From Penicillus capitatus (lineage: Eukaryota; Plantae; Chlorophyta): DNA of 64,000 nucleotides. The position numbers and the translations under genes are program-made. Location of the stretch: contig OZ287705.1 in the NCBI GenBank assembly GCA_965649825.1, forward strand, positions 638,990-702,989. Direction: 5' to 3'. Within the stretch, counting starts at the first letter, position 1, and every line of letters starts with the position of its first letter. The notes below the pieces were generated by a model. The model was not told the DNA's origin. It did not search any database and worked only from the letters and a program-made list of their open reading frames with translations. Shown here in pieces: positions 593 through 19,776 of this stretch.

Positions 593-717
593 CTTTGAGC
601 GAACGGGGCATCGTTACGCGCATCTCGCGTCGGATGCGGCAATTGACATCTGGCTTGCCAGATTACTCTTGTGATTGTGTATGTGGCAATATTCCACTAG
701 CTTTCGCGAATGCAGTG

Positions 718-1111
718 AATCTAAAGCAAAAGTCCCTTGGCGCTTACGTTAGGACTCCGTCCGCCCGATTAGGCTCCTTTGCAGCTAGAAAGAATCTCGG
801 TGTTGCCGATGGCTAAATCGCTGACAAGCGTCTCACTATTTAGATAGACGAGCAGAAGATGTCATTCTATTCGATTGCCATGAATCCAGGTAAGAAGAAG
901 GGATTAGCAGGTGAAATGATAACCAACGCGTGTTACTGTGACCTCAATCGACTCCGAGCTTCTCCTGACGGACTCCCTTTTCGGGCGACAATGCATCGTC
1001 CTCTCTGCCTGAGGCAGTCTCTAAACGTTTTTCGTTTGTGTATTATCGACTGTACACTACTGCAGTCTCTACGACCTGTCGCAGCTAGATGAGATGAAAT
1101 CGAAACGGCAC
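718..1111. repeat. ~395-bp dispersed direct repeat, copy 1 (copy 2 at 5350-5744)
   Basis: AATCTAAAGCA(A/G)AAGTCCCTTGGCGCTTACG...GCAGCTAGATGAGATGAA..CGAAACGGCAC aligns collinearly with 5350-5744, at roughly 90% identity by eye. Confidence 0.9.
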
Positions 1112-1324
1112 TGTTTTGCCTGATCTCGCAATGAATACACGATCCGAATGTGTTCTGTTGTTATTTGCAGCGACGAAGATCGATCGAACGAGTGGGATAG
1201 ATTGATGAATATTTGCAACAGCACGTATTGACATCAGATTTGCATATCAAAAGCAGACAACGACACGGTCAAACGGTGCAGTAGATGATTACTGATCTCT
1301 GCAGAAAGTCGAGCCCAGATAGAA

Positions 1325-1860
1325 GCATTCTGTAGTGTTCAATGATCACCAGTGGAGAACATTCAAAGGTGAAAGTACTGCACATCTTTCAGGTAGACTT
1401 GCTCACAGCAATCTGTACACAAAGCTGACCTGCATACATCCACCCTGTACTGAGAGATACTGCTGATTGTGCGGGATCGTGTAACTTTGCTTCGCACAAC
1501 AACGCACTTCAATCATTAAACACTAATCGGAGTTGCAAGTTGCGATGGAGCTTTATATACAGCACCATCGAATTGGAGCACTAGAACATGTCTGGCATGT
1601 AGATGCCAGACCAAGAATCAACAAAAAAGAAAGTGCATGACAGAAACGCCATGAATCATGCGCTCTTTGTAGAGGGAGACAACAAGGACTCGAGCTCAGC
1701 CCGTTCACTCGCAGAACAAGTAGTATCCTCTTTCGCACATATGATGTCGTAAGGAGTGCGCCCCTCTTTGTCCATAACCGACTTGGACGCACCAAAACCA
1801 ACCAGTACCTGTGTCATCGAACAATTATACGTTGGATCTGAGAAAATCTGCGATACCTCT
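1325..1860. repeat. Duplicated 3' flank, 3'-UTR, terminal exon and last intron of gene B; matches the gene C end at ~6250-6770
   Basis: TTCAATGATCACCAGTGGAGAACATTCAAAG, CATCCACCCTGTACTGAGAGAT and the terminal exons (GRTPYD(I/L)IC...ELESLLSPSTKSA) are shared in the same order. Confidence 0.85.
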
Positions 1861-3949
1861 GCGATTTCGATCGTACCAAGTGCTGCTGCCCAGTGAAGTG
1901 GAGTTAAACTGTCTGTGGTTTTCGCTTCGAAGTCCGCGCCGCGGTCAAGGAGGACCTTCGGCAGACGACTGTTCTTCGCAGACAACGAGCATTTCGTCGA
2001 CTGGCCTTTGCGGCTTCAACATTTCCGGAAAATACTACTTGATGAAGTGGAGTCGTGCCGTCGTCGTCCTTTGCCTTGACATCCGCGCCACGGTCAAGTA
2101 GGACCTTCGTCGACAGCAATTCGTCAGAAAACATAACTGACTGCATCGTCTGACCTTTACGATTCTAACCTCACCATAATATGCTGCCGAATGAAGTAGA
2201 GTGACGCCGTGTAGGTCTTTGGTCTTGATGTTTGCGCCACGGTCAAGAAGGAACTTCGCCAGACGGCCATTCGTCAGAAAATGCAGTTGACTGCGCCAGG
2301 ATACCTTTACGAGTTTGATTTTCCCGTACGTTACTGCTCGATGAAGTGGAGTCGTGCCATCTGTATCTTTAGCCTCTATATCCGCGCCGCGGTCAAGGAG
2401 GACCTTCGTTCGACGGCCATTCTGCACAGGAGAGCAAAGATTGCGTCGACGGACCTTAACGATTTCGACGTATCCTTCCCTTGCCGCTTTGTGAAGTGGA
2501 GTGTCCCCGTCTGAGGTTTTGGCCTCGATATCCGCGCTACGGTCAACGAGGACCTTCGTTGACAGCCATTCTTCGCGAGACACGATAATTGCGTCGACGG
2601 ACCTTAACGATTTCGACGTATCCTTCCATTACCGCTTGGTGAAGTGGAGTGTCGCTGTCTAAGGTTTTGGCCTCTATATCCGCGCCGCGGTCAAGGAGGA
2701 CCTTCGGTCAAACGGCGATTCGTCAGAAAACATGGACGATTGCGTCGACAGACCTTTACGGCTTCGACTTCTCCGTACGCTGCTGCTTGATGAAGTGGAG
2801 TCCAGCCGGCTGTGGTTTTAGATTCGATATCGGCGCCACGGTCAAGGAGGACCTTCGTTCGACGGCCATTCTTCACAGACAGCGAACATTGCCGTCGACG
2901 AACCTTTACGACTTCGAAGTATCCGTCCATTGCTGCAAAAGAGAGTGGAGTCCGGTCGTATATGGCTTTAGCTTCGATATCGGCGCCACGGTCAAGAAGG
3001 ACCTTCGTTCGACGGCCATTCTGCACAGACAGCGATCATTGCCGTCGACGGACCTTTACGTTTTCGACGTTTCCGAACAATACTGCATCATGAAGTGGAG
3101 TCGCGCCATATGTATCTTTAGCCTCTATATCCGCGCCGCGGTCAAGGAGGACCTTCGTCGACAACCATTCTTCGCGCGACACGATGACTGCGTCGACGGA
3201 CCTTTACGGCTTCGACGCTTGCCATCCTTACTGCTTGATGCAGTGGAGTGCTGCCATCTGTATCTTTAGCCTCTATATCCGCACCACGGTCAAGGAGGAC
3301 CTTCAGTCGACCTCTATTTTTCACAGAGAACGAACATCGCATCGACGAACCTTTTCGACATCGATGCGTCCGATAAATGCTGCTTCATGAAGTGGAGTCA
3401 TGCCGAATTCATCTGTCTTGACCTCGATATCCGCGCCACGGTCAAGGAGGACCTTCAGTCGACCTCTATTTTTCACAGAGAACGAACATTGCGTCGACAA
3501 ACCTTTACGACTTCGACGTGTGCGTACGTTACTGCTATATGAAGCGGAGTCGAGCCGTATGTATCTTTAGCGTCTATATCCGCGCCGTGGTCAAGGAGGA
3601 CCTTCGTCAGACGGTCACTCGTCAGAAAACATGAAAGCCTGCTTCGACGGACCTTTACAGTGTCAACCTTTCCGATCCTTGCTGCTTCGTGCAGCGGAGT
3701 CGATTCGCTATTGTCCGTAGCCTAGATATCCGCGCCTCGGTCAAGTCGTTAAAACAACATGTGTCCTTCCTACCTCGGATCTGAAAAAGACGGAGTCGGC
3801 GAACGCGCCGTCTGCAAAGAAGTCTGCTCAGCAGATGACACTGCCGTCGACACAGATGCATGACCGACGACGGTACCTCGGCTGCACGTCGACTTGCGCG
3901 GAGCGACGAGCAGAAAGCAGAGGCACGTGTGCAGAACGGCGCACTTCAT
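1656..3949 (-). CDS. Ankyrin gene B: predicted secreted protein with signal peptide, 1 partial and 12 full ankyrin exons, and a two-Cys cap exon
   Basis: ATG at 3949 gives MKCAVLHTCLCFLLVAPRKSTCSR; short exon 2 ...DGAFADSVFFRSE; partial repeat ATDNSESTPLHEAARIGKVDTVK; twelve 99/102-nt exons of the VLLDRGADIEAKxxxGxTPLHxAxxxGxVExVK type at ~150-nt period; terminal exon VLVGFGASKSVMDKEGRTPYDIICAKEDTTCSASERAELESLLSPSTKSA-TGA (1656). The frame is continuous when ~50-nt introns are removed. Confidence 0.9.
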
Positions 3950-5020
3950 GTTTTCGCAGGCAAAACGTCGGAGGCACTGCGAAGAATCGTTCGTCAAACC
4001 GAAATGCGAGGTTTGAAACAAGACACGGACGACGATGTGGAATTGAATTTGTAGGCTGTCCGCGCTGTCATGCGAATCTACAGGACATCGCCTGCATTCC
4101 TTCAAGGCTATTTGCGGAAGGGTTTAAGGGCAGGGAGTCACGGGCGTCCGTATCTGAGGAGCCGTACCGTGAAAAGGCAACCTGACAGCGTCCAAGCCTT
4201 CTTGAAGCCTTTCACCGTTCTTTACACTTGCATCCGCCGACCGTCCGCAGTTCGTCGTCTGACTGCGACATGGGCATCATTCGCTCACGTTCAAGCGATC
4301 TCTTACCTGTCGAGACTGTCGCAGGCGACGACAGCCAGGGAAGACTTCGCGTCGTCGTCCTGGCAAAAAGATCGTCTCTGCGCTTCGGTTGCGAACATCG
4401 AATGGACTGTCCGAATGGACATTTAAAGGGTCATCCTGCTGCCAGCTGAACATGAACTTGTTCTCCACTGCGCTTCTGCGGCGCATCGCGTACGTTTAAG
4501 GTATGTATCCAGGGCCTTCTGCACTGATGTGCTGAGTCGACATTTATCTTAGATTACCTGTACGAAACGCTCGTCATTCGGGAATCTGTGTATCAAGCGA
4601 TGTGGACAGGAAGGGATGCGATTACAACCTTAATGTGATCTCAAGTCTGCCATGTGGTGCAGAAGGCGCTTTTTGAGTGAGGATAACTACTGCACAGTGA
4701 AGGATGCCTGATGATGTGAATCTGGCCCCAGAATGAACATGCACAAGACTCGATCTTTTACACGCAACTGACTGTTCATGCTGGCAGTGCCGTCTATTCG
4801 TCCTCCGCCGTGACATCCATAACTGCGACGCGGTGCGAAGGGAGACAAGTGATTCTGGGCTTCACTCGGGCAAGACTGTCTACGAGCTGGCAGACGTGCA
4901 AGAAGATCTTCACCAGATAGAGGCAAAACCAGGATCCAGATGACAGACAGTGTGCCCATGGAATGCACTCCGTGATTGTCGCCTGTTCGATTGTTGGCTG
5001 CTCGTAAGATGTCGCTCGAG
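3775..5020. repeat. ~1.25-kb segmental duplication of the gene B 5' exons and upstream flank (copy 2 at ~12775-14040)
   Basis: Near-identical runs such as GACATGGGCATCATTCGCT...CATCGCGTACGTTTAAGGTATGTATCCAGGGCCTTCTGCACTGATGTG and AATGCACTC(C/T)GTGATTGTCGCCTGTTCGATTG occur in both copies. Confidence 0.9.
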
Positions 5021-5349
5021 GCGTGTCTCGGAGAGAGTGCCCTAGAATTGAGTTCTTTTACTTTGAGGCGATGTGACGAGGCGCGCGCAGTGTGGCCTGG
5101 CCCGTTTCGTCAGGAAGTTGGCAAATCAGACAGTTCCGCGTTCGCGCTCTGGCTCGGACAGTCCCTGTAACGAAAACCTTCGAGGTCTACTGTGATCCCA
5201 TCGCGATGCGTTGTTTGCAAATCGAGGTTGCAGTTTTTGTTAACAAAGGCGTCATTGACACAATCCAAGGTCTTTTGTATGAACAGGTCATTTCATCGTA
5301 TCCTTCGACACATCAGTCAAATCACTGGATCCTCGGCTTGGCTGCACTT

Positions 5350-5744
5350 AATCTAAAGCAGAAGTCCCTTGGCGCTTACGATAGGACTCCTTCCGCCCGA
5401 TTAGGTTCCTTTGCAGCTAGAAAGAATCTCGGTGTTGCCGATAGCTAAGTCGCTGGCAAGCATGTCGCTATTTAGATAGGCGATCAGAAGATGTCATTCT
5501 ATTCGATTGCCATGAATCCAGGTAAGAGGAAGGCATCAGTAGGTGAAATGATAACCAACGCGTGTCTACTGTGACCTCAATCGACTCCGAGCTTCTCCTG
5601 ACGGACTTCCTTTTCGGGCGACAATGCATCGTTCTCTCTGCCTAAAACAGTCTTTAAACGTTTCGCGTTATGTGCTGTCAATTGTACATTAGTGCCGTCC
5701 CCCGCTTAGTGTCGCAGCTAGATGAGATGAATGCGAAACGGCAC
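5350..5744. repeat. ~395-bp dispersed direct repeat, copy 2 (copy 1 at 718-1111)
   Basis: Collinear match to 718-1111. Confidence 0.9.
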
Positions 5745-6564
5745 CGCTCTCCTCACATGGTAGGAAAGTCACTATCCTCAATTGGTATTTGAGCTGTTCG
5801 GACGGCAAGGAGATGTCACGAATCCAATAGATTGCCGAGATTCACACTAGCACTTGCTGAAAAGAGATCGGCACAGCAAAGGCAAGACGCTATTCAACGG
5901 TGCCGTACGTAATCTCTTTTAAAGACGATATCGAGAAGGAAGGAGAAGCTTCAAAACGCTCTTGACAATTGCGACAGCACAGTGAAGATCTGAATTCCAG
6001 TCGAAGACGTAGGAGTCGACACACACAACCTTGCTAGTACAGAACGCGTTGTCGCAGCATGCGAAAATCTCGAAAGGCAAGAAATTGTCTTAATGTCCAT
6101 TGCGCACTCTGAGTACGTGTTAGCCAGATTCTGCAGTGCATCTTCCTTTCTAGCTTTTCAAATCTTCACTGTGTAAGACATCCATCAACAACGAAGCGTA
6201 TGGGCGGGTGTTAGAAACATAATCTGGAGGAGGCTGAGGGAATGGAGGACTTCTGTATTGTTCAATGATCACCAGTGGAGAACATTCAAAGATGAAGGCA
6301 CCGTAATCCCTTCAGCGTAGACTTGTTCACGGCAATCTGTACACAAAGTTGACCTGCATCCATCCATCCACCCTGTACTGAGAGATGCTGCTGATTGTGC
6401 GAGATGCACGTAATGACGATGCACAGAACAACAAACTAATCATTAAACACCATTCAGAGTTGCAAATTGAGATGGAGCTTTATGTACAGCACCATCTGTC
6501 TGGCACATAGATGACAGACCAAGGATAAAAACAAACAGGATATGCATGACAGAAGCGCCATGAA

Positions 6565-8694
6565 TCATGCGCTCTTTGTAGAGGGAGACAACAGGGACTC
6601 GAGTTCAGATCGAGTACTTTTGGAACATGTCGTATAAGCACCAATACATATGAGGTCGTAAGGAGTGCGCCCCTCTTTGTCCACAACCGACTTTGACGCA
6701 CCAAAGTCAAGCAGCACCTATGCATAGGACAACTATACCTTCGATCTGAGAAAATCTGTGCGTTACCTTTACTCTTCCAATCTCGGCTTGGTATGCTGCT
6801 TGATGCAATGAGGTCTTGCCGTCTTCATCTGCCGCCTCGGTGTTTGCGCCGGCTTCGAGAAGGAGCTACGATCACGGCCATTACTTAGCAGACGGCACAG
6901 GGTTGCGTCGACGGACTTTAATGGTGTCATCCATTCCGAACAGTACTGCACAAAAAAGCGAAGTTTCTCCAGAATAATCCTTCGCCTCGGTGTCCGCGCC
7001 TCTGTCGAGGAGAACCTGCGCCGATGGCCATTCCTTAAGTCACAGCAGAAGGCTGCGCCGACGGACCTTTATGGCTTCGAGGTGTTCAAAGTACACTGCT
7101 GTATGAAGTGGCGTCCTTTGGTTGTTGTCCACCGTTTCGATGTCTGCGCCTCTGTCGAGAAGAACCTGCCTCAACGGCCATTCCTCACGATACTGTAATA
7201 TTTGCATCGACCGACCTTTATGGCTTCGACCTTTCCCGTCGCTGTAGCGTACTGAATTGGAGTACGTTCAAACCACGTCTTCGCCTCGATCTCCGCGCCG
7301 CCGTCGAGGAGGATCTACGCAACGGCCCATTCCTCACGAAACTGCGGTGCTTAGGTCGACGGACCTTGATGGTTTCAACCAGTCCGAGCCTTGCCGCAAA
7401 ATGAAGTGCAGTAGATCCGTAATCGGTCGACGCCTCGGTGTCCGCGCCGCCATCGAGGAGGATCTACGTCAGCCGCCATCCTTGCGGGAAAGCGAAAGGT
7501 GCACAGACGTACCTCTACGACTTTAACGCTTCCTTTCCGTGCCGCGTAGTGTAGCGAAGTCCATCCATTGTCGTCCTTAGCGTCGATCTCCGCGCCTCTG
7601 TCGAGGAGGATCTACGGCCATTCGAATGGGGAAGAGAAAGTCGCGTTGACGTACCTTCACGACTTTAGCGCTTCCTTTCCGCGCTGCAAAATGAAGTGGA
7701 GTCCGTCCACTATTGGTCGATGCCTCGATCTCTGCGCCGCCGTCGAGGAGGATCTACGCTGACGGCTATTCTTGTCAGAAGAGAAAGTTGCATCGGCCTA
7801 CCTCTACGACTTCAAGACTTCCTAACTCTGCCGCGTAATGGAGAGGAGTCCGTCCCCTAGTGTTCGTCGCCTCGATCTCTGCACCTCGGTCGAGGAGGAT
7901 CTGTGACGGCGGCCATTCCTCACGAGACGGTGATATCTGCGTCGACGTACCTTTACGATTTCAAGACTTCCTATCTCTGCTGCATGATGAAGTGGAGTAC
8001 AGCCGTAGACATCTTCCTTGGCATCGACATCTGCGCCTTGATCCAGCAGGTCCTGCGCGTGACACTGCTCGACAAGGAGATTCGAGCGGAGTGAGTCGCA
8101 CCTTTACGCGTTCTACTTCTCCGCTACTAGCTGCCTCATGAAGTGCAGTCCATCCGTCCTCGCCAACAGGCCTATCGTTGACGGTTCCCTGATTGAACGC
8201 ACTCTTAGACTGTATCATCGATCTGTAGCTCTATGTTGGTGACGCGTCGGTCTACCGGATAGGTTTTCTGGGTTCCGTCGCCGTTCTAAGCAAAAAACAC
8301 GGCGCTACTGTTCTGCGGCGTTAAATTGTAGGTCGATTACTTGTTCGAATTTTCGGTCCGAGGCTTCGGCGTAGTAGATTCCTACGAAGCGAGACAGTCG
8401 CTCGGGCGAGGAACAACGCACGTGTGTCGCGTTACCTCCGTGGCGTGCGTCGTCTACGTTCTGTACATGGGGGGCGCAGAACCGTCATTCAGTAAAGGGT
8501 CAAAGCAAAAGGAGCCGTACCGAGAATCTCGACGAGACGGAGTTGGCGGACGCGTCGTCGACAAAGAAGTCTGCGGCGCAGCAAGACATCGCCGTCGACA
8601 CAGATGTATGGACGACGGTACCGCGGTTGCCTGTTGACGGGCGCGGAACAAAGATCAGAAGACTGAGCCACACGCTGAATGTTGTCAGCTTCAT
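6565..8694 (-). CDS. Ankyrin gene C: predicted secreted protein with signal peptide, 4 micro-exons, ~10 ankyrin exons and a two-Cys cap
   Basis: MKLTTFSVWLSLLIFVPRPSTGNR (73 nt); micro-exons of 50, 25, 41 and 30 nt (DFFVDDASANSVSSRFS / NVDDARHG / GIYYAEASDRKFEQ / NGDGTQKTYP); repeats such as DLLDQGADVDAKEDVYGCTPLHHAAEIGSLEIVK and ILLDGGAEIEAKTWFERTPIQYATATGKVEAIK; cap VLLDFGASKSVVDKEGRTPYDLICIGAYTTCSKSTRSELESLLSPSTKSA-TGA. Confidence 0.88.
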
Positions 8695-10216
8695 GGTTTC
8701 TTCGATAGCACAGTCGGTTCTTCTTCGCGAAGGTCGACGGACAGTTCGTGTGTTTCTCGAATCCGAAAACCGCGAATGAAGAATCGCCGTGGCGGGCGGA
8801 CTTTATTCCTCCGACGGTTCTGCGCCGCCATTCGCCACGCGGCTGCCTTCCATGGAGGGCTGTCCCTCGTCCGAGTCGGTACGCGTGCCAAGTGCTCGGC
8901 AAAGACGATGGAGAGACTCCATTCGTCATAGCGTCGTGGTCCCGTAACGGCCAGACTTCGTCGTGCAGGACGTCCGAGTCGCGTCCTGCAGTTCTTCTAT
9001 CCGTCGTCCGCCGCTTTGTCCGTGCAGATGCTTCGATGCCGCCGATGTACGAACGGTCTCTACCGAAGGTCGCTGACTTCAAGAATCGACTGCCTGTCAT
9101 ATCATCCTTCCTTGACGAGCGATCTTCTGGGGCTTATGTGCTAGAAACCGTCGAAAGTGCAATCCCGCGATGCCGAAGGTGGACAAGGGAGGCATCTGTT
9201 CAAGGCGACGTCGAGCGTGACGGATCAGGTTTCCTCTCCTTCTGTCGTGCAGTCCGTGTGTCTGGTCACTGTACTCGGCGTAAACTTCCGTTTCTGAATC
9301 TGGTGATCGCGGCCGTGCGTCGACAGTCTGCGACCGACGTAAGATGAACCACGGCTCGACTATCGGATAGTGTCTACCGCACCGTGCGACGGTGTCTGCG
9401 TCTGCCCTCAATATGCAAATCTAATGTCGTACATGATGTTGCACAAAATTCGGCAATCTATCGGTCTATGCAGAACTCATGTCGCACAAGAAACAAAAAA
9501 CACTTTGAGGGTTATGTATTTAGTGCGAGACAGGGAAGAACAGTGCAGTTTTGCAGGCATCTCGTCTCGTTCCATCCACTACGAAGTGGAACACGGCAAA
9601 GCACTGTTAACGGCACGTAAACGCAACAAAGCGTAGAAACTGTGCTACCTAGAGAGGACGATGCATTGTCAGCCGGATGGGTAGAGTCATTTAGAGATGT
9701 TTCAAGTTGTCTAGAGTCACGATGGATAAGCGTTGTTTGTCGTTACTCCACTGAACTCTTCGTCCAAATGTGCACGATGACGGAGGATTAAAGTCACATC
9801 TCCTGACTGTCTGCGCAGATAACGATGCCCTTGCCAGGCAACTCATCTGAAAACGCCACACGATAGGAGTAGCCTTGTGATACAGAGTAACTGATCGAGC
9901 GAACAGACTCTTAGTTCGTGGATGCCTTGCCGCGTTCATAGGCCAGCAGAAACAAAACCATCGTCCAGCCACGACAGTTCTTTACCAAAGCTGAGTCGTC
10001 TGTCTACAGCAGCCGCATCCGACGCGAAACGCGCGTAACGATGCGTCGCACAACAAACTTCAATCATTAAACACTGTTCAGAGTTGCAAGTTGAGATGGA
10101 GCTTTATTTACAGCGCCATCGAATTGGGGCACTAGAACATGTCTGGCATGTGAATGACAGACCAAGAATAGACAGCAGGATGTGCATGATAGAAACGCCA
10201 TGAATCATGCAGTCTC

Positions 10217-12945
10217 CTAATAAGGATACAAGAGAAACTCGAGCTTAGCTCGAGTACTCGTAGAGCACGAAACAAAACCAACATAGCATATGCGATCGTA
10301 TGGAGTGCGACCACTGTCGTCTTTAGCCAACTTGGATGCACCACCAGCAAGTAGTACCTGTACCATATGACAACTGTACCCAAGATTCGAACGATTCTGT
10401 GGTGTACCTCTACGACTTCAACCACACCGTAATCTGCCGCCCAATGAAGTGGAGTAGCGCCGTACGTGGTTTTGGCTTCGATGTTTGCGCCACGGTCAAG
10501 GAGGACCTTCGACAGACGACAATTCTTCATAGACAGCGAACATTGCGTCGACTAACCTTTATGGCATCGACCTGTTTTTTCGCTACTGCTTCATGAAGCG
10601 GAGTAGGACCATCTACATCCTTGGCGTCGATGTTCGCGCCACTGTCAAGGAGGACCTTTGTTGACCGCCATTCTTCACGAGACGGCGAATATTATGCTGA
10701 CAAACCTTTATGACTTCGACGCATCCTCCCATTGCTGCTTGATGAAGTGGAGTCGTGCTGTATTTATCTTCCTTAGCCTCGATATCCGCGCCGCGGTCAA
10801 GCAGGACCTTCGACAGACGGCCATTTTTCACACACAGCGAACATTGCGTCTACTAACCTTTACGACTCCAACCTCGTCCTGATATGCTGCCGAATGAAGT
10901 GGAGTTGTGCCGCTTGAGCTTTTTGCCTCGATATCTGCGCCTCGGTCAAGAAGAACCTTCGGCAGACAGCCATTCGTCAGAAAAGATTGGTAACTGCGTC
11001 GATGGACCTTTGCGGCTTCCACTTTTCCGTACGCTGCTGCTTGATGAAGTGGAGTCGTGCTGTGTTTATCTTCCTTAGCCTCGATATCCGCTCCGCGGTC
11101 AAGGAGGACCTTCGACAGACGGCCATTCTTCACACACAGCGAACATTGCGTCTACTAACCTTTACGACTCCAACCTCGTCATGATATACTGCAGTATGAA
11201 GTGGAGTAAAGCCGTCTGAGTCTTTGGCCTCGATATCTGCGCCTCGGTCAAGAAGAACCTTCGGCAAACGACCATTCGTCAGAAAACGTGGAAGACTGCG
11301 TCGACAGACCTTTGCGGCTTCGACATTTCCGATCGCCGCTGCTTGATGAAGTGGAGTAGATCCGTCTGAGTCTTTGGCCTCGATGTTTGCACCATGGTCA
11401 AGGAGGACCTTCGTTGACCGCCATTCTTCACGAGACGGCGAAGATTGCATGGACAAACCTTTATGACTTCGACGCATAATCCGATTACTGCTTGATGAAG
11501 TGGAGTAGTCTCGTCTTCGTTTTTGGCTTCGATATTTGCCCCACGGTCGAGGAGGACCTTCGGCAAACGGCCATTCTTCACACACAGTGAACATTGTTGT
11601 CTACTAACCTTTACGACTCCAACCTCGTCATTATATGCTGCAGCATGAAGTGGAGTTCCGCCGCTTGAGCCTTTTGCCTCGATGTTCGCGCCTCGGTCAA
11701 GAAGAACCTTCGGCAGACGACCATTCGTCAGAAAAGATTGGTAACTGCGTCGATGGACCTTTGCGGCTTCGACATTTCCGGTCGCTGCTGCTTGATGGAG
11801 TGGAGTCGAGCCGTATTCATCTTCCTTAGCCTCGATATCCGCGCCGCGGTCAAGGAGAACCTTCGACAGACGGCCATTCTTCACACACAGCGAACATTGC
11901 GTCTACTAACCTTTAAGACTCCAACCTTGTCATAATATATTGCAGTATGAAGTGGAGTAAAGCCGCTTGAGCTTTTTGTCTCGATATCTGCGCCTCGATC
12001 AAGAAGAACCTTCGGCAGACGACCATTCGTCAGAAAAAGTTGATAACTGCGTCGACGGACCTTTACGGCTTCGACATTTCCGTACCCTGCTGCTTGATGG
12101 AGTGGAGTCAAGCCGTATTCATCTTCCTTAGCCTCGATATCCGCGCCGTGGTCAAGCAAGACCTTAATTGACGAGAATTCTGCACGACACAGCGAAGACT
12201 GAGCCGGTGGACCTTTATGGCTTCAACATTTCCGGTCCCTGCTGCTTGATGAAGTGGAGTCCAGCCGCTATTGTCTGCAGTCTCGACGTCTGCGAGTTGG
12301 TAAAGGTGAAACTGTGTCCACAGTTGTGACCATGGCAATCTGATTTGGTTAGCACACACCTTCTCGAGTTCATTACTTCCATCCGCAGCCCTCTTATGAA
12401 GTCGAGCCTGCCTGTCGATTCCGACAGCCTTATTGCCTGTTCTTTGCCCAAGGGCGCCCTATGTCAGTAAAAACGATCCGAGGCGTTGTGTTACAGACGC
12501 TCTATTTTACGTGGTAGGTTTTCTGAATTCCGGTTTCTCCCTGCACAAGAACATCGCGCTGGTTTCTCGACGACGCTAACCGCACCTCAGTCGTTCTTCG
12601 GATCTTTACGGCTGCGGCTTCTCTGTGTTTCGTTCCTGGAATCAAGACAGCAGCGCGCACAAGGAACAACACATGCGAGCTTTGTTACCCCGACGCGCAT
12701 AGTCGCCGCTCTGAGGATGGGCATCGGAGCCGCCATTTAGTCAAGATGTCAGTACAACGCGAGTCCTACCTCGGGTCTGGAGAAGACGGAGTTGGCGAAC
12801 GCGTCGTCTGTAAAGAAGTCTGCTCAGCAGAAGACATCGCCGTCGACACAGATGCATGACCGACGACGGTACCGCGGCTGCCCGTCGACTTGCGCGGTGC
12901 AAAGAGCAGAAGGCAGAGGCACGTGTGCAGAACGGCGCACTTCAT
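10217..12945 (-). CDS. Ankyrin gene D: predicted secreted protein with signal peptide, 4 micro-exons, 1 degenerate and 13 ankyrin exons, and a two-Cys cap
   Basis: MKCAVLHTCLCLLLFAPRKSTGSR; micro-exons; degenerate 99-nt repeat GALGQRTGNKAVGIDRQARLHKRAADGSNELEK; FHLYQLADVETADNSGWTPLHQAAGTGNVEAIK; twelve further repeats of the VLLD(R/H/S)GA type; cap VLLAGGASKLAKDDSGRTPYDRICYVGFVSCSTSTRAKLEFLLYPY-TAG. Confidence 0.88.
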
Positions 12946-14040
12946 GTTTTTGCAAGCAAAGCGTCAGAGGCACTGCGAAGAATCGTTCAGTCGTGTTGAA
13001 ACGCGAGGTTTGGAACAAAACACACACGACGATTCAGATTCAGAATTGAATTTGTAGGCTGTCCGCGCTGTCATCCGAATCTACAGGACATCGCTTGCAT
13101 TCCTTCAAGGCTATTTGCGGAACGAGCCTAACGGCAGCAAGCCTCGGGCGTCCGGTTTCTGAGGAGTCGGAACGCGGAAAGGCGACCAGACGGCGTCCAA
13201 GCCTGCTTGAGGCCCTTCGCTGTTGTTCGTACTTGCGTCCGCCGACAGCGTGCAGTTCGTCTTCTGACTGCGACATGGGCATCATTCGCTTACGTGCAAG
13301 CGATCTCTTACCTGTCGAGACTGTCGCAGGCGACGACAGCCAGGGAAGACTTCGCGTCGTCGTCCTGGCAAAAAGATCGTCTCTGCGCTTCGGTGGCGAA
13401 CATCGAATGGACTGTCCGAATGGACATTTAAAGGGTCATCCTGCTGCCAGCTGAACATGAACTTGTTCTCCACTGCGCCTCTGCGGCGCATCGCGTACGT
13501 TTAAGGTATGTATCCAGGGCCTTCTGCACTGATGTGTTGAGTCGACATTTATCTTAGATTACCTGTACGAAACGCTCGTCATTCGGGAATCTGTGTATCA
13601 AGCGATGTGGACAGTAAGGGATGCGATTACAACCTTGATGTGATCTCAAGTCTGCCATGTGGTGCAGGAGGCACTTTATGAGGAAGGGCGGCTTTGTACA
13701 GCGAAGTTTGCTAATGATGTGAATCTGGCTGCGGCTTTCACACGTCGACAGGAGTCGTTTTTCTAAGTACAACAACCAATATCTGTCATTCTAGCACTGC
13801 TGTCTATTTGTCGTCCGTGATGACATCCATCAAACTGCTGTCTGCTGTGGAGGGAGAGAGACAAGTGATTCTGTGCTTTGCTCAGGCGAGAGATACTGTG
13901 TAAGAGCTGGCAGAGGTGCAAGAGGTTCCACGTTAGTCAGGGGTAAACCAGACGTCCAGAATTCAAGCAGTATGCCGTGGAATGCACTCTGTGATTGTCG
14001 CCTGTTCGATTGCTGGCCTTACTTACGTACGATGTCTCTT
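12775..14040. repeat. ~1.25-kb segmental duplication, copy 2 (gene D 5' exons and upstream flank; copy 1 at 3775-5020)
   Basis: Collinear high-identity match to 3775-5020. Confidence 0.9.
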
Positions 14041-17000
14041 AGGATGAAGTCATCGAGGATCGCGACTTGAAGAGTTCTTTTGCCGCTGGGGTGACGGCAG
14101 ATGACAGATACCGAGCACAAGACCGAAACTGCGCCACGCGCCTGAGTTGCGTCATCCTAATACCTTCTAGGTAAGGCGCGAGATGCTCCGCGGATGATCG
14201 TAGTCTGCTAGGTGTTATGATGAAGGAAATGGCTGCCTGTCGATCCACCTACTCGCTACTGCCAAAGGTCTAGATCTGCCTGAGCCTCATTCTGTCTCAC
14301 GAACCGTAAGTCTGCAGGTCATCGCGTCGCCATCGACTGTCCATCCGTCTCTTTAAACTCTTACTGCAAACAGTCAGTCTTATCTGTCACTTGTGCGTCC
14401 ATATTGCAGAGCTTTTCAACATCGTCCTTCTCCAAGCGTTCCTCAGAAGTGGAAACTGCTCGACACCTGGATCGTTGTAGTTGAAGACGATGATATGGCG
14501 GTCGTGGATATAGTACAGGACCTTGGACAGCCAATGGCGCTTGAACCACAAGGAAGAGCATCATGATTACACTGTCGTTTAGTGTACGACACTTGAGTCT
14601 TTCTGCTGTGATGTGACGCAATTTTGATAGACTGATCAAATCAAGCCTCTTGCTGTTTGGCTTCGCCATCCCTGCTAACGACGCCGTCTCGCTGCCATCA
14701 TGGCAACTCCGTCATCGTGCGATTGAGCACACCTCTCTCCCGGCAGCACTAGTATAGAGCCTTCAAGGACTGACTGCCTGTCGTTTTCGGCCTTTCTCTC
14801 GAGAATGACTTGTCGTTTCGATTGAATGCCCTTCCCTAGCAATCAGTCTCGTCGTAGCTGTTCTCCTCGGAAACATCTCTTGACAGGACTGCTGTCGTAT
14901 CATCCTTCTCTGTCGAGAGCTCTTTTGAGACTGTACGTATGGGCTGACAACTGTCGAAGATGCAGCTTCGTGCTGCTGAGGGTGGACAGAGAAGATCGAA
15001 CTGCATCTCGGAGCTCCGCGTGGAGGCACCTGTGGCAAACACACTTCTGGCAGAGTGCCTACAGTCCTATGCTGTGCAAGATACATGCAGTAACGCGCTG
15101 TCCTTCGACTGCTATCAGAAAATCACTCACGGTCACACTCGGACTCTCCCACCGAAGCCTCAATTGGAGGACTGGCAATCTCTTGACTGCAGGATGACCC
15201 TTGACTGACTCAAGGGTCATCTAAGTCTTGTCAGACGAATACCTTCCGCTCCGTCGTGGGTAGCCGGTGACACGTCGCGACAGAGAGGTAGGTGTTCGTT
15301 CCGTTTCTGCGGCCCTTCCGTCCGCGCCACTGTGTTTCCTCTGTCCCTTGCGAGTGCGGTCTGGCATGGGACAGGTGGCATGGATGGATGCTTTGGAGAG
15401 AGCCCTTCAACACGACTGTCGCATTTCGGCTGCCGTGACGTTGAGCAACTCCAGAACAGGAGAAGAACGTCGACGGAAGCATGTGACTGTTGCCTTCGCG
15501 AATACGGATCTCCGAATCCGGGTAACTGATGGTCACTTGAAGCGTCGAAATGGATTGCCTCCGAGGCAGAAGGACTGGAAGTCTCCGACACCCGAATAGA
15601 ACGTTGCCGGCCCGTCCCCGTTCCGCTCCGGATCAGGATTCGCACTTATGAGAAGCATCAGAGATGCCGACCGCATTGCTTATGACTTTGGCGGAAGTGC
15701 AGCCGGAATCACTGCACGCCGCTTGGCTCTCAACAGATCGACTTTTGAATGCAATGGAGGAAGCACACCGTTGACATCGCGCAGAGGAGACGGCTGAAAC
15801 TTCAAGGTCCTCTCCGAACCATGGCTCCGCAGAATGATACGAAGAGGTGTTCCCAGAAGAGCACAGGACGGATAGGATCATCGATCAAGGCGTCAACGTG
15901 TGTCGGACGACGTTTCGTTAGCCGTACAGTAATGAATGCGAGGAATGAAGCCGAATATGATGCCGTCACGGGTGCCGAATAGAATGGAAAGGAAGCGTTT
16001 TGGTCTCTTAGATGTCTTCAAACGGAAGAAGGCTCTGGCAGTCCATGTAACGACAAACCTTCTGGGTCACCCTGAGAGGTATGCACAAGCTCGGAGCCAA
16101 CGGGTTCAGAAACACTGTATCGTAGATCTCTTTCGCGACGGCATCAGTAGTTTCATTACAGAGCGACTGCAGATCGATAAGAGAAATGGAAGAAGGTCTG
16201 TCCATCGTCGACTAGAGAAAGAAGTCTGAAGTAGTGGTGTCCACAGCAGAAGTGCGTTCCAGTGCTTAAACTGACTTTTGTGAAAACACTGTTGCAGGTG
16301 AATCATTTGAATGATGATGAGTGCGTCACGGGCAAGCTGTTCATGTCTTCGGAGGTGTTGGCCAGCTGTCAGACAAGCAATGTGTGTGAGAGGCACAGGA
16401 TAAGGCACGGTCACGACATGATTGTATATCGAGGAGAGAATTGGCCGAGGCGTTATTGGAAGATGAAGAAGGTGTGTTCTTGACGAGATGCAGACATGTT
16501 CTTACAGCATTCACCCGCCGCTAGAGAACACAAGGGTAGAGTTCTATGATTCTTGTCGGTATGTGAGTGGTGGCTGTAGTCATGCATCGTTGTGCAAATG
16601 GAAGAAGCAAAGGCAACAATGAATGCCGGAGATCGTAACATTATCGATGGCCATTTCGCGAATCGTCAAAGTTTATCAGTGGACACTACCCTGTCTGAGT
16701 GACGTGACGGTCTCTAGTAAAGCAGTCGTTTTCTTTTTCGATGGCAAAACAGCTTTTCGTTCGGAGTTCGTTACATAAGAGAGCTGTTGCGATGACCGTT
16801 TAAACGGGCAATGCCTTGCCAGTATCCGATATCAACGCTGCTGCAAAACAACATCAAGACGGACAAGAATCCTTCGCACCCAACACAGAAAAAGAAAAAG
16901 AGTGGAAATCATGCAACGCGTGACAGGCCAATGCGGACTGTTATTATTATTCCCTGCGTCTTGATGGTCACACACCAACCATTCATCCTCTATATCCACT

Positions 17001-17117
17001 AAAAACACTCGACGAACTGCAGCGGCCATCCCAGCCACCATACTCTCTCTGAAAAAGGATCTGGTAGGCAGACATTGTGATCAAGGCATGTGCCTGTCAA
17101 GAGGGAAGTGGACGCAC

Positions 17118-17324
17118 ATTCTCGACGTTTTCGTTCCCGAACTGATCGGCCAATTCTTTGGGCAGAAGACCATTGCATCGATCGCAGATGTCGACGCCGC
17201 CAATGTCGATGTACTGATTGACGAGGCCTCCGCAATTGGGATCGTCTGTCTTTGCCGCCAAGCACTGGGGCGTCAAGCCATCTTTGTTTTCGATCGTCGA
17301 ATCGGCACCAGAATTCAGGAAGAG
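17118..17324 (-). CDS. Isolated exon with about two divergent ankyrin-like repeats; the rest of the gene is not resolved and may be a pseudogene
   Basis: TTGCAG|LFLNSGADSTIENKDGLTPQCLAAKTDDPNCGGLVNQYIDIGGVDICDRCNGLLPKELADQFGNENVEN|GTGCGT is a phase-0 exon with a GAD...GLTP..LAA motif. Confidence 0.45.
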
Positions 17325-18004
17325 CTGCAAAACAGCACCCCACGGCAGTCTACAGATGTTGATGTACGGAATAGACATACGGCGTTCATGGGCGATTGGC
17401 AGAAGCGGCTTGTCGTATGCAAAGGCGTGTCGCCGTTGGCGTCCGTAACGTCGACGTTGCATTGGAAACGCTCGGCCTCGATGAGCTCTCAGGCAAAGGT
17501 AACGGCTTCGAACTGAGCCGCCGAGTGGTCCATTTGGATAGACCATTCGATGTGGTCTCCGTCTCGCAGAGACGACCGTTTCGTCTCGACGACAACGGAC
17601 AGTTCTCTTTAGCAGCAGCTGAGCGCACTGGCTCCGAAGACAAGGTCACCTCTCGCGTGTAGGTGAATGATGCCCATGTCACTGTCGGAACGCGAAAGGT
17701 CGCCCCGCTGCGAAAAGAAGTACTCGCCACTCGACGGAGCTTCATGCAGCACGGGTCGCTGTCTGCTCTCTTTTCAGCGCTCTGGCTGTACGAGAAAGGG
17801 ACGCCAGAGGTTTCCTCTCGGAAACATCCTCCTCGAATGTGGCGAAGGATCGCCTGTTGTTGTCCGTACATCTGCACGACATCACGGACAGCCCGCAATT
17901 TCAATTTCGCAACGGAGTGTCGGTTTTCATTTGAACTTCGCATTCGAACCAGTGAAACGGAGTTTGGCCCTTACGGTGTCTCTGGCGTCTGCACTCGCGG
18001 AAAC

Positions 18005-19097
18005 ATGAAACGCGCTGTTCTTTGCGCTTGGCTCTGTTTCCTTCTTCCACGCTCGACTTTCGGAAGTCATGGTCGTGCCGGTTAAACCATCTCGTCCCTC
18101 AGTCGAGCTTGTCGTTGCGCGAAGGTGCCCAGCTGTCAGCGGAAGGGAACGCTGGAGATAGTCGCTTGCGCAACACAGCCGCCAAGAGAAACGACGACAA
18201 CGCCGAACAGGTGAAACAAACAACCGTAGACCGAGCGCGACGACAAAGGCTGCCGACGCAGTTGCAGATCGGGCACAACCCCGACTACCACAACGCTTCG
18301 ATCGTCGCAACGAAACCGCTTCATGTGGCAGCCGCACTGGGAAGAGCAGACCGCGTGAAGGTGCGTTAAGTAACATACGGGAGAAGGTTCACTGGCGAAT
18401 CTCTTCTGTGCAGCGTCTTCTCGATCGCGGTGCGGACATCGACGAGACAGAAGAGAACGGTTTCACAGCACTCCACTGCGCAGTGTCGATTCCCTCAGAA
18501 GGAAGCGCGGCGACTGTCGAAGCGAGAGCGCAGACCGTGAAAGTAAACGCCGATATGTGATCGCCCTGTCGCTTGTGATTGCGATTGCAGGTTCTGCTCG
18601 ACGAAGGAGCGAACATCGAAGCGAAAGACGAGCAGGGCATCACTCCATTGCACCTTGCAGCCGCCACAGGATGCGTGGAGGTTATTCAGGTGAGGCGCTC
18701 AGTCTGCTTTACAGCCGAGTGACGCGAGATGCCTTGGCAGATTCTGCTCGATCACGGCGCGTCCAAAAATGTGAAGGACACGTCGGGGAGCATCCCATAC
18801 GACCTTGTGTATCTCTTTGTGGACGAGGAGGATTCTGGAAACGAGAGGTCTGTGGTCGAGTCCATGTTGAATCCACAAGGGGATCGCAGCAACGACGATG
18901 GCAAGCACCGCCCGTGGTGGCGCATGGCACTGATCATCGGTTCTATTGGTTTCGTTGTTCTGATCGCCGTTCTTCTGACAGTCACGGCGTGCTGCGTTAT
19001 TCATGGACCATCGATGAGCATTGACACAACCAACGGTCCATCGCTGAGCTTTGACACGACCAACCACCCGTTTTATCCAACACGGTCCAAGATCTGA
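18005..19097 (+). CDS. Ankyrin gene E: predicted type I membrane protein (signal peptide, 3 ankyrin exons, cap, TM helix, short tail)
   Basis: MKRAVLCAWLCFLLPRSTFGSH; repeats ...ATKPLHVAAALGRADRVK, RLLDRGADIDETEENGFTALHCAV..., VLLDEGANIEAKDEQGITPLHLAAATGCVEVIQ; terminal exon ILLDHGASKNVKDTSGSIPYD...WWRMALIIGSIGFVVLIAVLLTVTACCVIHGPSMSIDTTNGPSLSFDTTNHPFYPTRSKI-TGA. Confidence 0.85.
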
Positions 19098-19776
19098 TGA
19101 CACTGGGAAATGACGTTGTGCGCATCTGGGTCAAAGTGGATACGAATGCTTGGACTCCTGAGTGATGCTGATGAGAGCGCAGGGTTTTAATCGCCTCGGT
19201 TCTATTCTTTCCTACGACGATATCGCGCCACTCGATCTTGTCGTGTCTTCAGGAGGGCAACTTCGTCGAATTGGACATCGCAATGTCCAACGTCCCGAGG
19301 CGCTCTGCAGATGTGGCCGTCATTGTGTGATTTCCTATAGACTTACCAGTTAAGGCGGTAGCTCTAATTGGGTTCCGACAGCTATGGATCCAAAGAGACC
19401 GTCGTCGCCATTTTAGAAGTTCCAGCAGCTGTCGCTGTCAGTGACGAGGACAACATGTGCACGACAGTCAGGTACGATGTGACCCGTTTAACATTGTCGT
19501 ACGGTGTGTATTGCTGTACAGACAGAGAAACCGAAATGGCCGAACAAACGCATCACGCTTCGAGAGACGATAGAAATCCACAAAGAACTGCATCCATTAC
19601 ACCCTTCTGTCTCGATCCCTCGTGCACAGCAAGGGGATACCGGACAGAAGGGACATCGGATAACCCAACGTTCACTAAACGAATCCGGACTGCAAGCCAC
19701 AGCGAAATCGATACACAGAAGGTACGTCTACAGGCGCGATGACGCGATAGCAGAACAAAAAACTATCGTCACGCAG

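What the first reader, a model, noticed from the sequence alone, without database searches (positions are those of the whole stretch)
1325..5020. Gene B is a mosaic: D-like 5' end and repeat introns, C-like terminal exon and downstream flank
Seen in sequence: B's signal exon and ~1.2 kb upstream flank are nearly identical to D's (MKCAVLHTCLC...; 3775-5020 vs 12775-14040), and its repeat introns end in D-type GAAG|GTC. B's last intron (CAGATTTTCTCAGATC), cap exon (GASKSV.DKEGRTPYD.IC...LLSPSTKSA) and downstream flank (1325-1480; 718-1111) instead match C (6250-6770; 5350-5744). B's 3'-UTR also carries a GACATGTTCTAGTGC(T/C)CCAATTC segment shared with D but absent from C. Inference: repeated unequal crossover or gene conversion between neighbouring paralogues builds new genes from parts.
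Basis: partly seen in the sequence, partly recalled or inferred. Interest (0 to 1): 0.72.

Follow-up and report, generated by a model that had tools for sequence, protein, structure and literature searches.

The report
Mosaic secreted-ankyrin gene from paralogue recombination
Gene B really is a patchwork whose front end resembles one family of neighbouring ankyrin-repeat genes and whose tail resembles another; this is the ordinary result of recombination between duplicated genes, seen here in an unidentified microbial eukaryote.

Summary
B (minus strand, about 711-5059) has a 5' flank, signal exon and repeat units of the type found in D. Its last intron, cap exon and about 770 bp of downstream flank are of the type found in C. 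A maximum chi-square test places the switch at the donor site of the last repeat exon (between 1859 and 1846, p<1/5000). NJ trees conflict: in the 5' tree B sits in clade {A,B,D,L4a,L5c} (100% bootstrap); in the cap tree it sits in {B,C} (84%) while {D,L4a,L5c} stays apart (100%).

Three corrections apply:
- B-D upstream identity averages 84-86%, not "nearly identical". Only 4258-4662 is 98.3% identical, and the distal flank is closer to A and to an off-window paralogue.
- The 19-nt UTR segment is ancestral. It is missing only in A and C.
- B lacks the N-terminal exons that D, F, C and H share, and it keeps a repeat remnant with an in-frame TAG.

An independently deposited metagenome contig carries the same junctions on a haplotype that is 3% divergent. 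It also carries a 46-bp tract identical to C, so assembly chimerism is unlikely. Mosaic paralogues in tandem families are well known, so interest is modest.

The parts
711..1480 (-). Downstream flank of B, C-type 3' module (homologous to C flank 5343-6405)
   Evidence: 711-1111 against 5343-5744 is 88.4%. 711-1283 against 5343-5907 is 79.3%, and 1319-1477 against 6242-6405 is 84.8%. A, D and F are only about 45% identical here, which is no real homology.
1031..1076 (-). Short tract that differs between the two haplotypes; the ENA contig version is identical to C
   Evidence: 18 consecutive variable sites show B'=C and differ from B, while on both sides B'=B and differs from C. Permutation p<1e-4.
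1481..1655 (-). 3' UTR, conserved in all paralogues and carrying little phylogenetic signal
   Evidence: 84-91% identical to A, C and D alike. The informative splits are few and conflict with each other.
1570..1588 (-). 19-nt UTR segment TGTTCTAGTGCTCCAATTC
   Evidence: Present in B, D, F, L4a, L4c, L5a, L5b, L5c and the related species, partly deleted in L4b, and absent only in A and C. It is the ancestral state.
1656..1808 (-). C-terminal cap exon including the TGA stop, C-type
   Evidence: B-C 81%, B-A 72%, B-D 64%. The clade {B,B',C} has 84% bootstrap support. Gene model.
1809..1856 (-). Last intron (48 nt), C-type
   Evidence: B-C 83% against B-D 60%. The maximum chi-square breakpoint falls between 1859 and 1846.
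1857..3601 (-). Array of 12 ankyrin-repeat exons (99 or 102 nt) separated by 11 introns of 49-52 nt, D-type
   Evidence: Exon chain with GT/GC-AG borders. TRF finds period 150 and 11.4 copies. For every B exon the best non-B match is a D unit. Mean B-D identity is 72%, against D-D 73% and B-C 64%. Pfam Ank E=3e-112 with 12 repeats.
3650..3745 (-). 5'-truncated repeat remnant with an in-frame TAG (3722-3724). CTTGAC (3740-3745) is the microhomology at the deletion junction.
   Evidence: Reads LDRGADI*ATDNSESTPLH... in the repeat frame. B-D homology ends here, and D has about 470 bp more.
3774..3811 (-). Exon 2 (38 nt; an alternative acceptor 12 nt upstream at 3823 is also in frame). It ends in phase 0 and can splice to exon 3601 across a 172-nt intron.
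3877..3949 (-). Signal-peptide exon MKCAVLHTCLCFLLVAPRKSTCSR, 5' type I
   Evidence: 21/24 residues identical to D. The signal region is about 90% identical to D and L4a, 88% to L5c, 83% to A and 59-65% to C, F and H. Clade I has 100% bootstrap support.
3950..4257 (-). Proximal upstream flank, where B is the outgroup to D and L4a
   Evidence: 83-89% identical to D. There are runs of sites where D=L4a and both differ from B.
4258..4662 (-). Tract nearly identical to D (about 13263-13667)
   Evidence: 7 differences in 405 bp (98.3%), flanked by 10-28 differences per 50 bp. The B=D run has permutation p=0.0017.
4663..5059 (-). Distal upstream flank, closest to A's upstream and to paralogue L4a rather than to D
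   Evidence: B-A 86-91% and B-L4a 93% (for 4780-4642), against B-D 66-72%.
5343..6768 (-). C's 3' module (last intron, cap exon, UTR, flank), the closest relative of B's 3' module
12764..14081 (-). D's 5' module (upstream flank, signal exon, exon 2), a type-I relative of B's 5' module

Best explanation
B is a genuine recombinant paralogue in a large cluster of genes that encode ankyrin-repeat proteins with an N-terminal signal peptide. The genes are built from cassettes. A 5' module holds the promoter flank, the signal exon and exon 2. A run of 150-bp units follows, each a 99- or 102-nt phase-0 exon plus an intron of about 50 nt. A 3' module holds the last intron, the cap exon, the UTR and the flank.

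B joins a type-I 5' module and D-type repeat units to a C-type 3' module. The join lies at or within about 13 nt of the donor site of the last repeat exon. It is therefore an exon-shuffling event inside an intron, and the reading frame is preserved.

The most economical history (inferred) has four steps:
1. The adjacent D-C block was duplicated in tandem.
2. The copied pair was fused by a Lepore-type deletion between the ends of the two repeat arrays.
3. A microhomology-mediated deletion (CTTGAC) removed the N-terminal cap exons.
4. Short ectopic gene-conversion tracts from D, A and L4a later overwrote parts of the upstream flank, and in one haplotype a tract from C overwrote part of the downstream flank.

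The predicted product is a 484-aa protein with 12 repeats that enters the secretory pathway. Whether it is still made is unknown.
For: Shown:
- The trees conflict. In the 5' tree, clade {A,B,D,L4a,L5c} has 100% support. In the tree of last intron plus cap exon, {B,B',C} has 84% and {D,L4a,L5c} has 100%. C with L5a, and D with L4a and L5c, keep the same partners at both ends, so B is the odd one out.
- In the maximum chi-square test, B matches D at 29 informative sites and C at 8 on the 5' side of the breakpoint, and D at 25 and C at 55 on the 3' side. The breakpoint falls between 1859 and 1846, p<1/5000.
- Homology in the flanks is present or absent by type.
- The repeat exons and introns are D-like, and the acceptors are the D-type GAAG.
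- 4258-4662 is 98.3% identical to D.
- The ENA contig ERZ25074695 ctg340182 is colinear with the window. It carries both junctions, and the 3' junction lies inside a block that is 3% divergent between the two assemblies. Two distinct haplotypes therefore share the mosaic.
- The 46-bp tract matches C in that haplotype only.
- A second case occurs outside the ankyrin genes: at 44051-44261 the ENA version matches a paralogue at 96%.

Inferred: the block arithmetic fits. The D-C block of 8739 bp, minus 3641, 466, 299 and 15 bp, gives 4318 bp, and the B block measures 4349 bp (coordinates).
Against: - Identities to the nearest relatives are only 80-90%. The founding event is therefore old and its direction and order cannot be proved.
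- Only about 110 kb of the 285-kb contig plus two other loci were seen, so closer donors may exist elsewhere.
- The UTR gives no clear signal.
- Today's D and C are only 57-67% identical around the 3' junction. Homologous crossover there would need an older, more similar state or a microhomology join.
- The distal upstream flank is A-like, which the simple block model explains only by adding later conversion.
- No reads were available. Apparent haplotype-specific tracts could in principle be polishing artefacts from mis-mapped paralogous reads.
- No RNA evidence exists for the gene model.
Confidence: 0.8

Rival explanations
1. The mosaic is an assembly artefact: the contig switches between haplotypes or collapsed paralogues inside the repeat array.
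For: The window and the ENA contig differ sharply in a block at about 800-2650. B' there has an array about 165 bp shorter, with partial-unit deletions. Long-read assemblies at 16-20x coverage can mis-join tandem repeats.
Against: The limits of the divergent block (about 800 and about 2650) do not coincide with the mosaic junctions (1856/1857 and 3740-3768). Both assemblies show the same D-type to C-type switch inside the block, although they differ by 3% there. The 5' junction lies in sequence that is 99.7% identical between the assemblies.
Confidence: 0.04
2. B keeps an older arrangement, and the D-type or C-type genes are the recombinants. In this reading the exchange is real but its direction is reversed.
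For: All four combinations of 5' type and 3'-flank type occur: D has I/I, F has II/I, C has II/II and B has I/II. This proves that recombination happened but not which gene was affected. Other members also look patchy: L4a's UTR groups away from D, and A's cap exon is intermediate.
Against: C with L5a, and D with L4a and L5c, each form groups that agree at both ends, while B alone jumps between them. B is involved in the closest relationship at both ends. B also shows derived deletions.
Confidence: 0.1
3. No exchange between genes occurred. A mobile or independently inserted element sits downstream of both B and C, and the cap exons resemble each other through constraint.
For: Sequence related to the B/C flank also occurs downstream of D (9373-9837) in inverted orientation at about 64% identity, and in direct orientation downstream of H and L5a. 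This is how a dispersed element behaves.
Against: The C-likeness starts in the last intron and covers the cap exon at silent and intronic sites. It runs colinearly through to 711. Constraint cannot make an intron 83% identical to C against 60% to D. The 5' and 3' trees conflict even when the flank is left out.
Confidence: 0.04

Closest known systems
Lepore-type fusion genes made by non-allelic homologous recombination between tandem paralogues (delta-beta globin; established knowledge)
   Same: The 5' part and upstream flank come from one paralogue, and the 3' part and downstream flank come from the next. The join is in frame.
   Different: Here the fusion sits beside an intact D-C pair, so the block must have been duplicated first. 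The join lies at an exon-intron border in a repeat array. Identities of 80-90% show that the event is old, and later conversion tracts have overlaid it.
Recombining effector and recognition gene families: Phytophthora ramorum RXLR paralogues (PMC3820680) and the Podospora het-e/het-d/hnwd WD-repeat genes cited in PMC5100051
   Same: These are clustered, fast-evolving paralogues. They show gain and loss of repeat units, recombination or gene conversion among paralogues, and allelic divergence.
   Different: The fold is ankyrin rather than WY or WD40, and each repeat has its own exon. The organism and function are unknown, and no link to pathogenicity or self/non-self recognition is shown.
Domain-repeat evolution by unequal crossing-over and concerted evolution (PMC5100051)
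   Same: Whole units of 150 bp are gained and lost. The arrays are homogenised internally: B7/B8 are 90% identical, and D has an internal five-unit duplication at 83.5%.
   Different: Here the introns are copied together with the exons and are just as conserved (72% against 74% within B). The unit of exchange is therefore exon plus intron.
Ankyrin-repeat genes with one 99-nt exon per repeat, such as vertebrate ankyrins (recalled from memory, not tested here)
   Same: Phase-0 exons of 33 codons, one per repeat.
   Different: The genes here are small, lie in tandem clusters, start with a signal peptide and have introns of about 50 nt. No sequence relationship beyond the ANK fold was found (best database identity 48% or less).

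Membership tests
Ankyrin-repeat proteins (Pfam PF00023 / PF12796) | Tandem 33-residue ANK repeats that score above the Pfam gathering threshold | tested here: met
   Spliced B model: PF00023 E=3e-112 with 12 repeats, and PF12796 E=2.4e-103.
Secreted (signal-peptide) proteins | A cleavable N-terminal signal peptide | not testable with these tools
   The start MK followed by the hydrophobic run CAVLHTCLCFLLVA is visible and conserved among paralogues. Two conserved Cys in the cap exon fit a secretory route. No signal-peptide predictor or experiment was available.
Recombinant (mosaic) paralogue | Different segments have different nearest relatives, with statistical support | tested here: met
   5' clade I has 100% support. 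In the cap tree {B,B',C} has 84% and {D,L4a,L5c} has 100%.
Recombinant (mosaic) paralogue | A localised breakpoint that is more than chance clustering of informative sites | tested here: met
   Maximum chi-square of 22.6 between 1859 and 1846; none of 5000 permutations reached it.
Recombinant (mosaic) paralogue | The junctions are reproduced in an independent assembly or haplotype | tested here: met
   The ENA contig ERZ25074695 ctg340182 carries both junctions, and the 3' one lies within a block that is 3% divergent. Whether the underlying reads are independent is unknown.
Ectopic gene-conversion tract | A run of near-identity to a paralogue, bounded on both sides by much lower identity | tested here: met
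   4258-4662 is 98.3% identical to D, with a run test p=0.0017. 1031-1076 in the ENA haplotype is identical to C, p<1e-4.
Lepore-type fusion after block duplication | 5' flank colinear with the upstream gene's flank, 3' flank colinear with the downstream gene's flank, and a length that fits a single internal deletion | tested here: inconclusive
   Colinearity and length fit (expected 4318 bp, observed 4349 bp). However, the distal 5' flank is A-like rather than D-like, and a 284-bp spacer with no match (5060-5342) separates the blocks.
Pseudogene | Disabling lesions in the coding exons or splice sites | tested here: inconclusive
   For a pseudogene: the N-terminal cap exons are lost, a remnant carries a TAG, intron 11 has a GC donor, the ENA allele has partial-unit deletions, and the two alleles differ by 11 non-synonymous and 4 synonymous codon changes. 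Against: the ATG is intact, and 12 open repeat exons plus the cap exon have correct phases and an in-frame route from exon 2.

The most novel reading that the evidence does not exclude
The cluster could be a cassette system in an undescribed microbial eukaryote. In this reading the promoter/signal modules, the exon-plus-intron repeat units and the cap/UTR modules reassort continually. The conserved introns and the unusually conserved 3' UTR would serve as the homology anchors. Nearly all differences between haplotypes would then arise by ectopic conversion rather than point mutation. This would be a standing generator of diversity for a secreted binding-protein repertoire, comparable in logic to antigenic-variation families.
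Probability: 0.12. Interest if true: 0.65.

Novelty: new member of a known kind. Interest (0 to 1): 0.33.

Why it matters
This locus is a clean, well-bounded example of how repeat-protein families diversify. Phase-0 exons that each encode one repeat, copied together with their introns, allow any exchange at unit level or within an intron to stay in frame. The promoter/signal, repeat and cap/UTR modules can therefore be recombined. The comparison with a second haplotype suggests that ectopic conversion, not point mutation, causes most local polymorphism. The family itself has no named relatives and appears only in a few metagenome contigs. If the organism were identified and the proteins shown to be secreted, the cluster could be a useful model for the evolution of effector-like repertoires. 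The phenomenon as such is textbook.

Tried and rejected
- A protein search with the whole spliced B model returned only generic ankyrin proteins at 48% identity or less and told nothing about origin.
- A profile of the family-specific cap exon found six unnamed ORFs on ENA metagenome contigs and no named organism.
- Cluster look-ups gave no names or accession numbers. A literature search for the two ERZ accessions found nothing. The organism therefore stays unidentified. The features seen are GT-AG introns of about 50 nt, about 52% GC, and large intron-poor neighbouring genes for PMP-like beta-helix and TRP-like membrane proteins.
- An Rfam scan of 1-30000 at E<=1 found no match, so the conserved UTR is not a known RNA family.
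- The orthologous B region in the related species (contig ctg303386) could not be reached, because no protein found by a search lies near it. L002 covers only the part orthologous to window 28.7-50 kb.
- The idea that B's UTR was converted from D was considered and dropped. The 19-nt segment is ancestral and the other UTR sites conflict.
- The idea that the repeat remnant corresponds to D's first repeat was rejected. Its best matches are the internal units D4, B4 and D2, at about 79%.
- No unit-by-unit orthology between the B and D arrays was found. D has a 302-bp two-unit super-period that B lacks.
Full report
**What the region is.** The window is eukaryote-like DNA of about 52% GC. It carries a cluster of genes with a common build:
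- a short signal-peptide exon and a 38-50-nt second exon;
- in most members, a few N-terminal exons;
- a run of ankyrin-repeat exons of exactly 99 or 102 nt, separated by GT-AG introns of 43-57 nt;
- a 150-nt cap exon and a conserved 3' UTR.

Exon lengths are fixed while intron lengths vary by non-multiples of three. This is direct sequence evidence for the exon-intron model.

B lies on the minus strand. Its parts are the ATG at 3949, the signal exon 3949-3877, exon 2 at 3811-3774, twelve repeat exons from 3601 to 1857, and the cap exon 1808-1656. Spliced this way it gives a 484-aa ORF with 12 Pfam ANK repeats (E=3e-112). TRF sees the array as period 150 with 11.4 copies.

| B segment | Partner | Identity |
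|---|---|---|
| 3768-4998 | D 12764-14017 | 85.8% over 1261 columns |
| 1328-1850 | C 6251-6758 | 79.8% |
| 711-1111 | C 5343-5744 | 88.4% |

Segment-by-segment identities from a five-gene alignment of the 3' ends:

| Segment | B-D | B-C | Other |
|---|---|---|---|
| Last repeat exon | 75% | 54% | |
| Last intron | 60% | 83% | |
| Cap exon | 64% | 81% | B-A 72% |
| UTR | 84-91% to every paralogue | 84-91% | |
| First 75 nt of flank | about 45% | 91% | others about 45% |

All 11 B repeat introns end in GAAG, as do 10 of 12 in D. C, F, G and H use CAG or TAG. For every B repeat exon, the best match outside B is a D unit. Mean B-D identity (72% for exons, 71% for introns) equals D-D identity (73%) and exceeds B-C identity (64% and 63%).

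**Statistics.**
- For the triplet B/D/C, informative sites read 29 D to 8 C up to position 1859, and 25 D to 55 C from 1846 onward. The maximum chi-square is 22.6, and none of 5000 permutations reached it. The switch therefore sits at the donor site of the last repeat exon.
- I added paralogues from the same-species contig: A's 5' part from L003, plus L4a-c and L5a-c. The NJ tree of the signal region then gives clade I {A,B,D,L4a,L5c} at 100% bootstrap, against clade II {C,F,H,L4b,L5a,L5b}.
- The tree of last intron plus cap exon gives {B,B',C} at 84% and {D,L4a,L5c} at 100%.
- C with L5a, and D with L4a and L5c, keep the same partners at both ends. B does not, so B is the recombinant.

1. The upstream flank is not uniformly D-like. 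Position 4258-4662 differs from D at only 7 sites (98.3%). Position 3950-4257 has 9-15 differences per 50 bp, and there D and L4a are each other's closest relatives with B outside them. Position 4663-5059 is 66-72% identical to D, but 86-91% identical to A's upstream and 93% identical to L4a over 4780-4642. Over 3950-4835 the best single match is L4a at 89.3%.
2. The 19-nt UTR segment is present in nearly all paralogues and in the related species, and is missing only in A and C. It is ancestral. The other UTR sites give few and conflicting splits.
3. B lacks about 470 bp that D, F, C and H share between exon 2 and the first full repeat. B-D homology ends at a CTTGAC that also belongs to the repeat consensus. 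Downstream of it lies a 5'-truncated repeat with an in-frame TAG at 3722-3724. Exon 2 ends in phase 0 and can reach exon 3601 across a 172-nt intron, so an open reading frame survives.

**Independent sequence.**
- A neighbouring ORF led to the ENA metagenome contig ERZ25074695 ctg340182 (285,549 bp). Two window ORFs are found exactly on it, and locus L003 covers A through D.
- The contig is colinear with the window. Positions 1-800 are identical and 2666-15448 is 99.7% identical. Positions 800-2650 differ at 62 sites (3%), and the contig's B array is shorter, with partial-unit deletions.
- Both mosaic junctions are present in the contig. The 3' junction lies inside the divergent block, so two distinct haplotypes carry the same mosaic. 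This argues against an assembly chimera.
- Within the flank, the contig has a run of 18 consecutive variable sites (1031-1076) identical to C, while on both sides it agrees with the window's B against C (p<1e-4). This is a short ectopic conversion tract that differs between the two haplotypes.
- The same pattern recurs outside the ankyrin genes. Of 110 substitutions between the window and the contig over 28.7-50.1 kb, 102 lie in six clusters. In the largest cluster (44051-44261) the contig version matches a paralogue at 96%, against 80% for the window version. A TRP-like ORF shows the same thing at the protein level.
- The two B alleles differ by 11 non-synonymous and 4 synonymous codon changes in exons B10-B12 and the cap exon. 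Intron divergence is similar. There is therefore no sign of purifying selection on that part of B.

**Mechanism.**
- *Shown:* B's segments have different nearest relatives. The 3' switch is at an exon-intron border. Short tracts of near-identity to paralogues exist. Large blocks of the region are segmentally duplicated at 88-96%.
- *Inferred, the founding event:* B's flanks match D's upstream and C's downstream, D and C are adjacent in that order, and B lies just beyond C. The simplest history is a tandem duplication of the D-C block followed by a deletion that fused the copy of D to the copy of C at the ends of their arrays. This is a Lepore-type product. The arithmetic fits: 8739 bp minus 3641, 466, 299 and 15 bp gives 4318 bp, against 4349 bp observed.
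- *Inferred, crossover rather than conversion:* the C-type flank has no homologue beside D-type genes. A crossover explains the 3' module better than a conversion tract does, because a conversion tract needs homology on both sides.
- *Inferred, later events:* short conversions from D, A and L4a then patched the upstream flank. Every repeat exon is a phase-0 cassette copied together with its intron, and introns are as conserved as exons. Exchanges at unit level or within an intron therefore keep the frame.

**Comparison with what is known.**
- Mosaic paralogues in tandem families arise by unequal crossing-over and gene conversion.
- Repeat arrays evolve by the same processes (PMC5100051).
- Effector families show recombination among paralogues (PMC3820680).

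B fits these patterns. The family itself has no named relatives. A cap-exon profile finds only six ORFs on metagenome contigs from two ENA assemblies. In the related species a type-I 5' module is paired with yet another cap type, so modules have also reassorted between species. The organism could not be identified.

**Verdict.** The phenomenon is a new instance of a well-known kind, in an uncharacterised gene family. Interest is modest.

Noticed in passing
window 1504-1569 (B), with equivalent blocks near 515-580 (A), 6440-6505 (C), 10060-10125 (D) and 27165-27230 (F); also L002 about 540-610: A 3' UTR core of about 66 nt (GATGGTGCTGTACATAAAGCTCCATCTCAACTTGCAACTCT...GTGTTTAATGATTGAAGT) is 88-92% identical among paralogues whose cap exons are only 62-81% identical. 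It is recognisable in a related species. No Rfam family matches it. It could be a regulatory or polyadenylation element, or a homology anchor for recombination.
   Followed up: partly
window 1857-3601 and 10408-12311: All B repeat introns and nearly all D repeat introns use the uncommon AAG acceptor (GAAG|GTC). C, F, G and H use CAG or TAG. The acceptor type has evidently spread with the duplicated unit. In the window, intron 11 of B has a GC donor (2005-2004); in the ENA haplotype it is GT.
   Followed up: partly
window 10444-12267: D's array has a 302-bp super-period of two units, in which 99-nt and 102-nt exons alternate. It also has an internal five-unit duplication (10444-11506 against 11196-12260, 83.5%). 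B's array has neither.
   Followed up: no
window 800-2650 against L003 5904-7600: This block is 3% divergent between the window and the ENA contig, and the flanks on both sides are nearly identical. The ENA B allele has a 9-bp in-frame deletion and deletions of about 51 and 101 bp that cut exon-intron borders. These are either a decaying allele or assembly errors at 20x coverage.
   Followed up: partly
window 39335-44261 against L001: 102 of 110 substitutions between the two assemblies fall in six clusters. The cluster at 44051-44261 (41 substitutions) matches a paralogue on L004 (19217-19453) at 96% in the ENA version. In the TRP-like ORF 38729-40132, the ENA allele equals paralogue P0138 at residues 28-37. 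Patchy ectopic conversion therefore seems general in this region.
   Followed up: partly
window 9373-9837, 50945-51256; L005 4540-5109: Sequence related to the B/C downstream flank (about 64% identity) lies downstream of D in inverted orientation, and downstream of H and L5a in direct orientation. It may be an old dispersed element or a small unannotated gene.
   Followed up: no
window 14000-19855; L004, L005, L007: Segmental duplications of 5 kb or more at 88-96% identity link the window to other parts of the same contig and to a second contig (ctg334143). D's upstream 14000-14800 is 95.5% identical to L005.
   Followed up: partly
window 18005-19100 (+), gene E: E has the family's signal peptide and a cap-like exon. 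It then continues into a hydrophobic stretch (WWRMALIIGSIGFVVLIAVLLTVTACCVI) that looks like a transmembrane anchor. It may be a membrane-bound member of the family.
   Followed up: no
window 32033-36888 (+), 38729-44227 (-), 53593-58907 (+): There are three copies of a large unit made of a Chlam_PMP/beta-helix ORF, a Cys-rich ORF with a weak, sub-threshold DUF7630 match (checked in two of the copies), and a TRP-like (PF06011) multipass membrane ORF. The ankyrin genes are interspersed among these copies. They are probably large surface proteins.
   Followed up: partly
window 5060-5342: A 284-bp spacer lies between the end of C's flank homology and the start of B's upstream homology. It has no match anywhere in the sequence examined.
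   Followed up: partly
window 1656-1808 and the cap exons of A, C, D, F and H: Two cysteines are conserved in the cap exon (..YD.IC......C..). This would fit a disulfide in a protein that passes through the secretory pathway.
   Followed up: no
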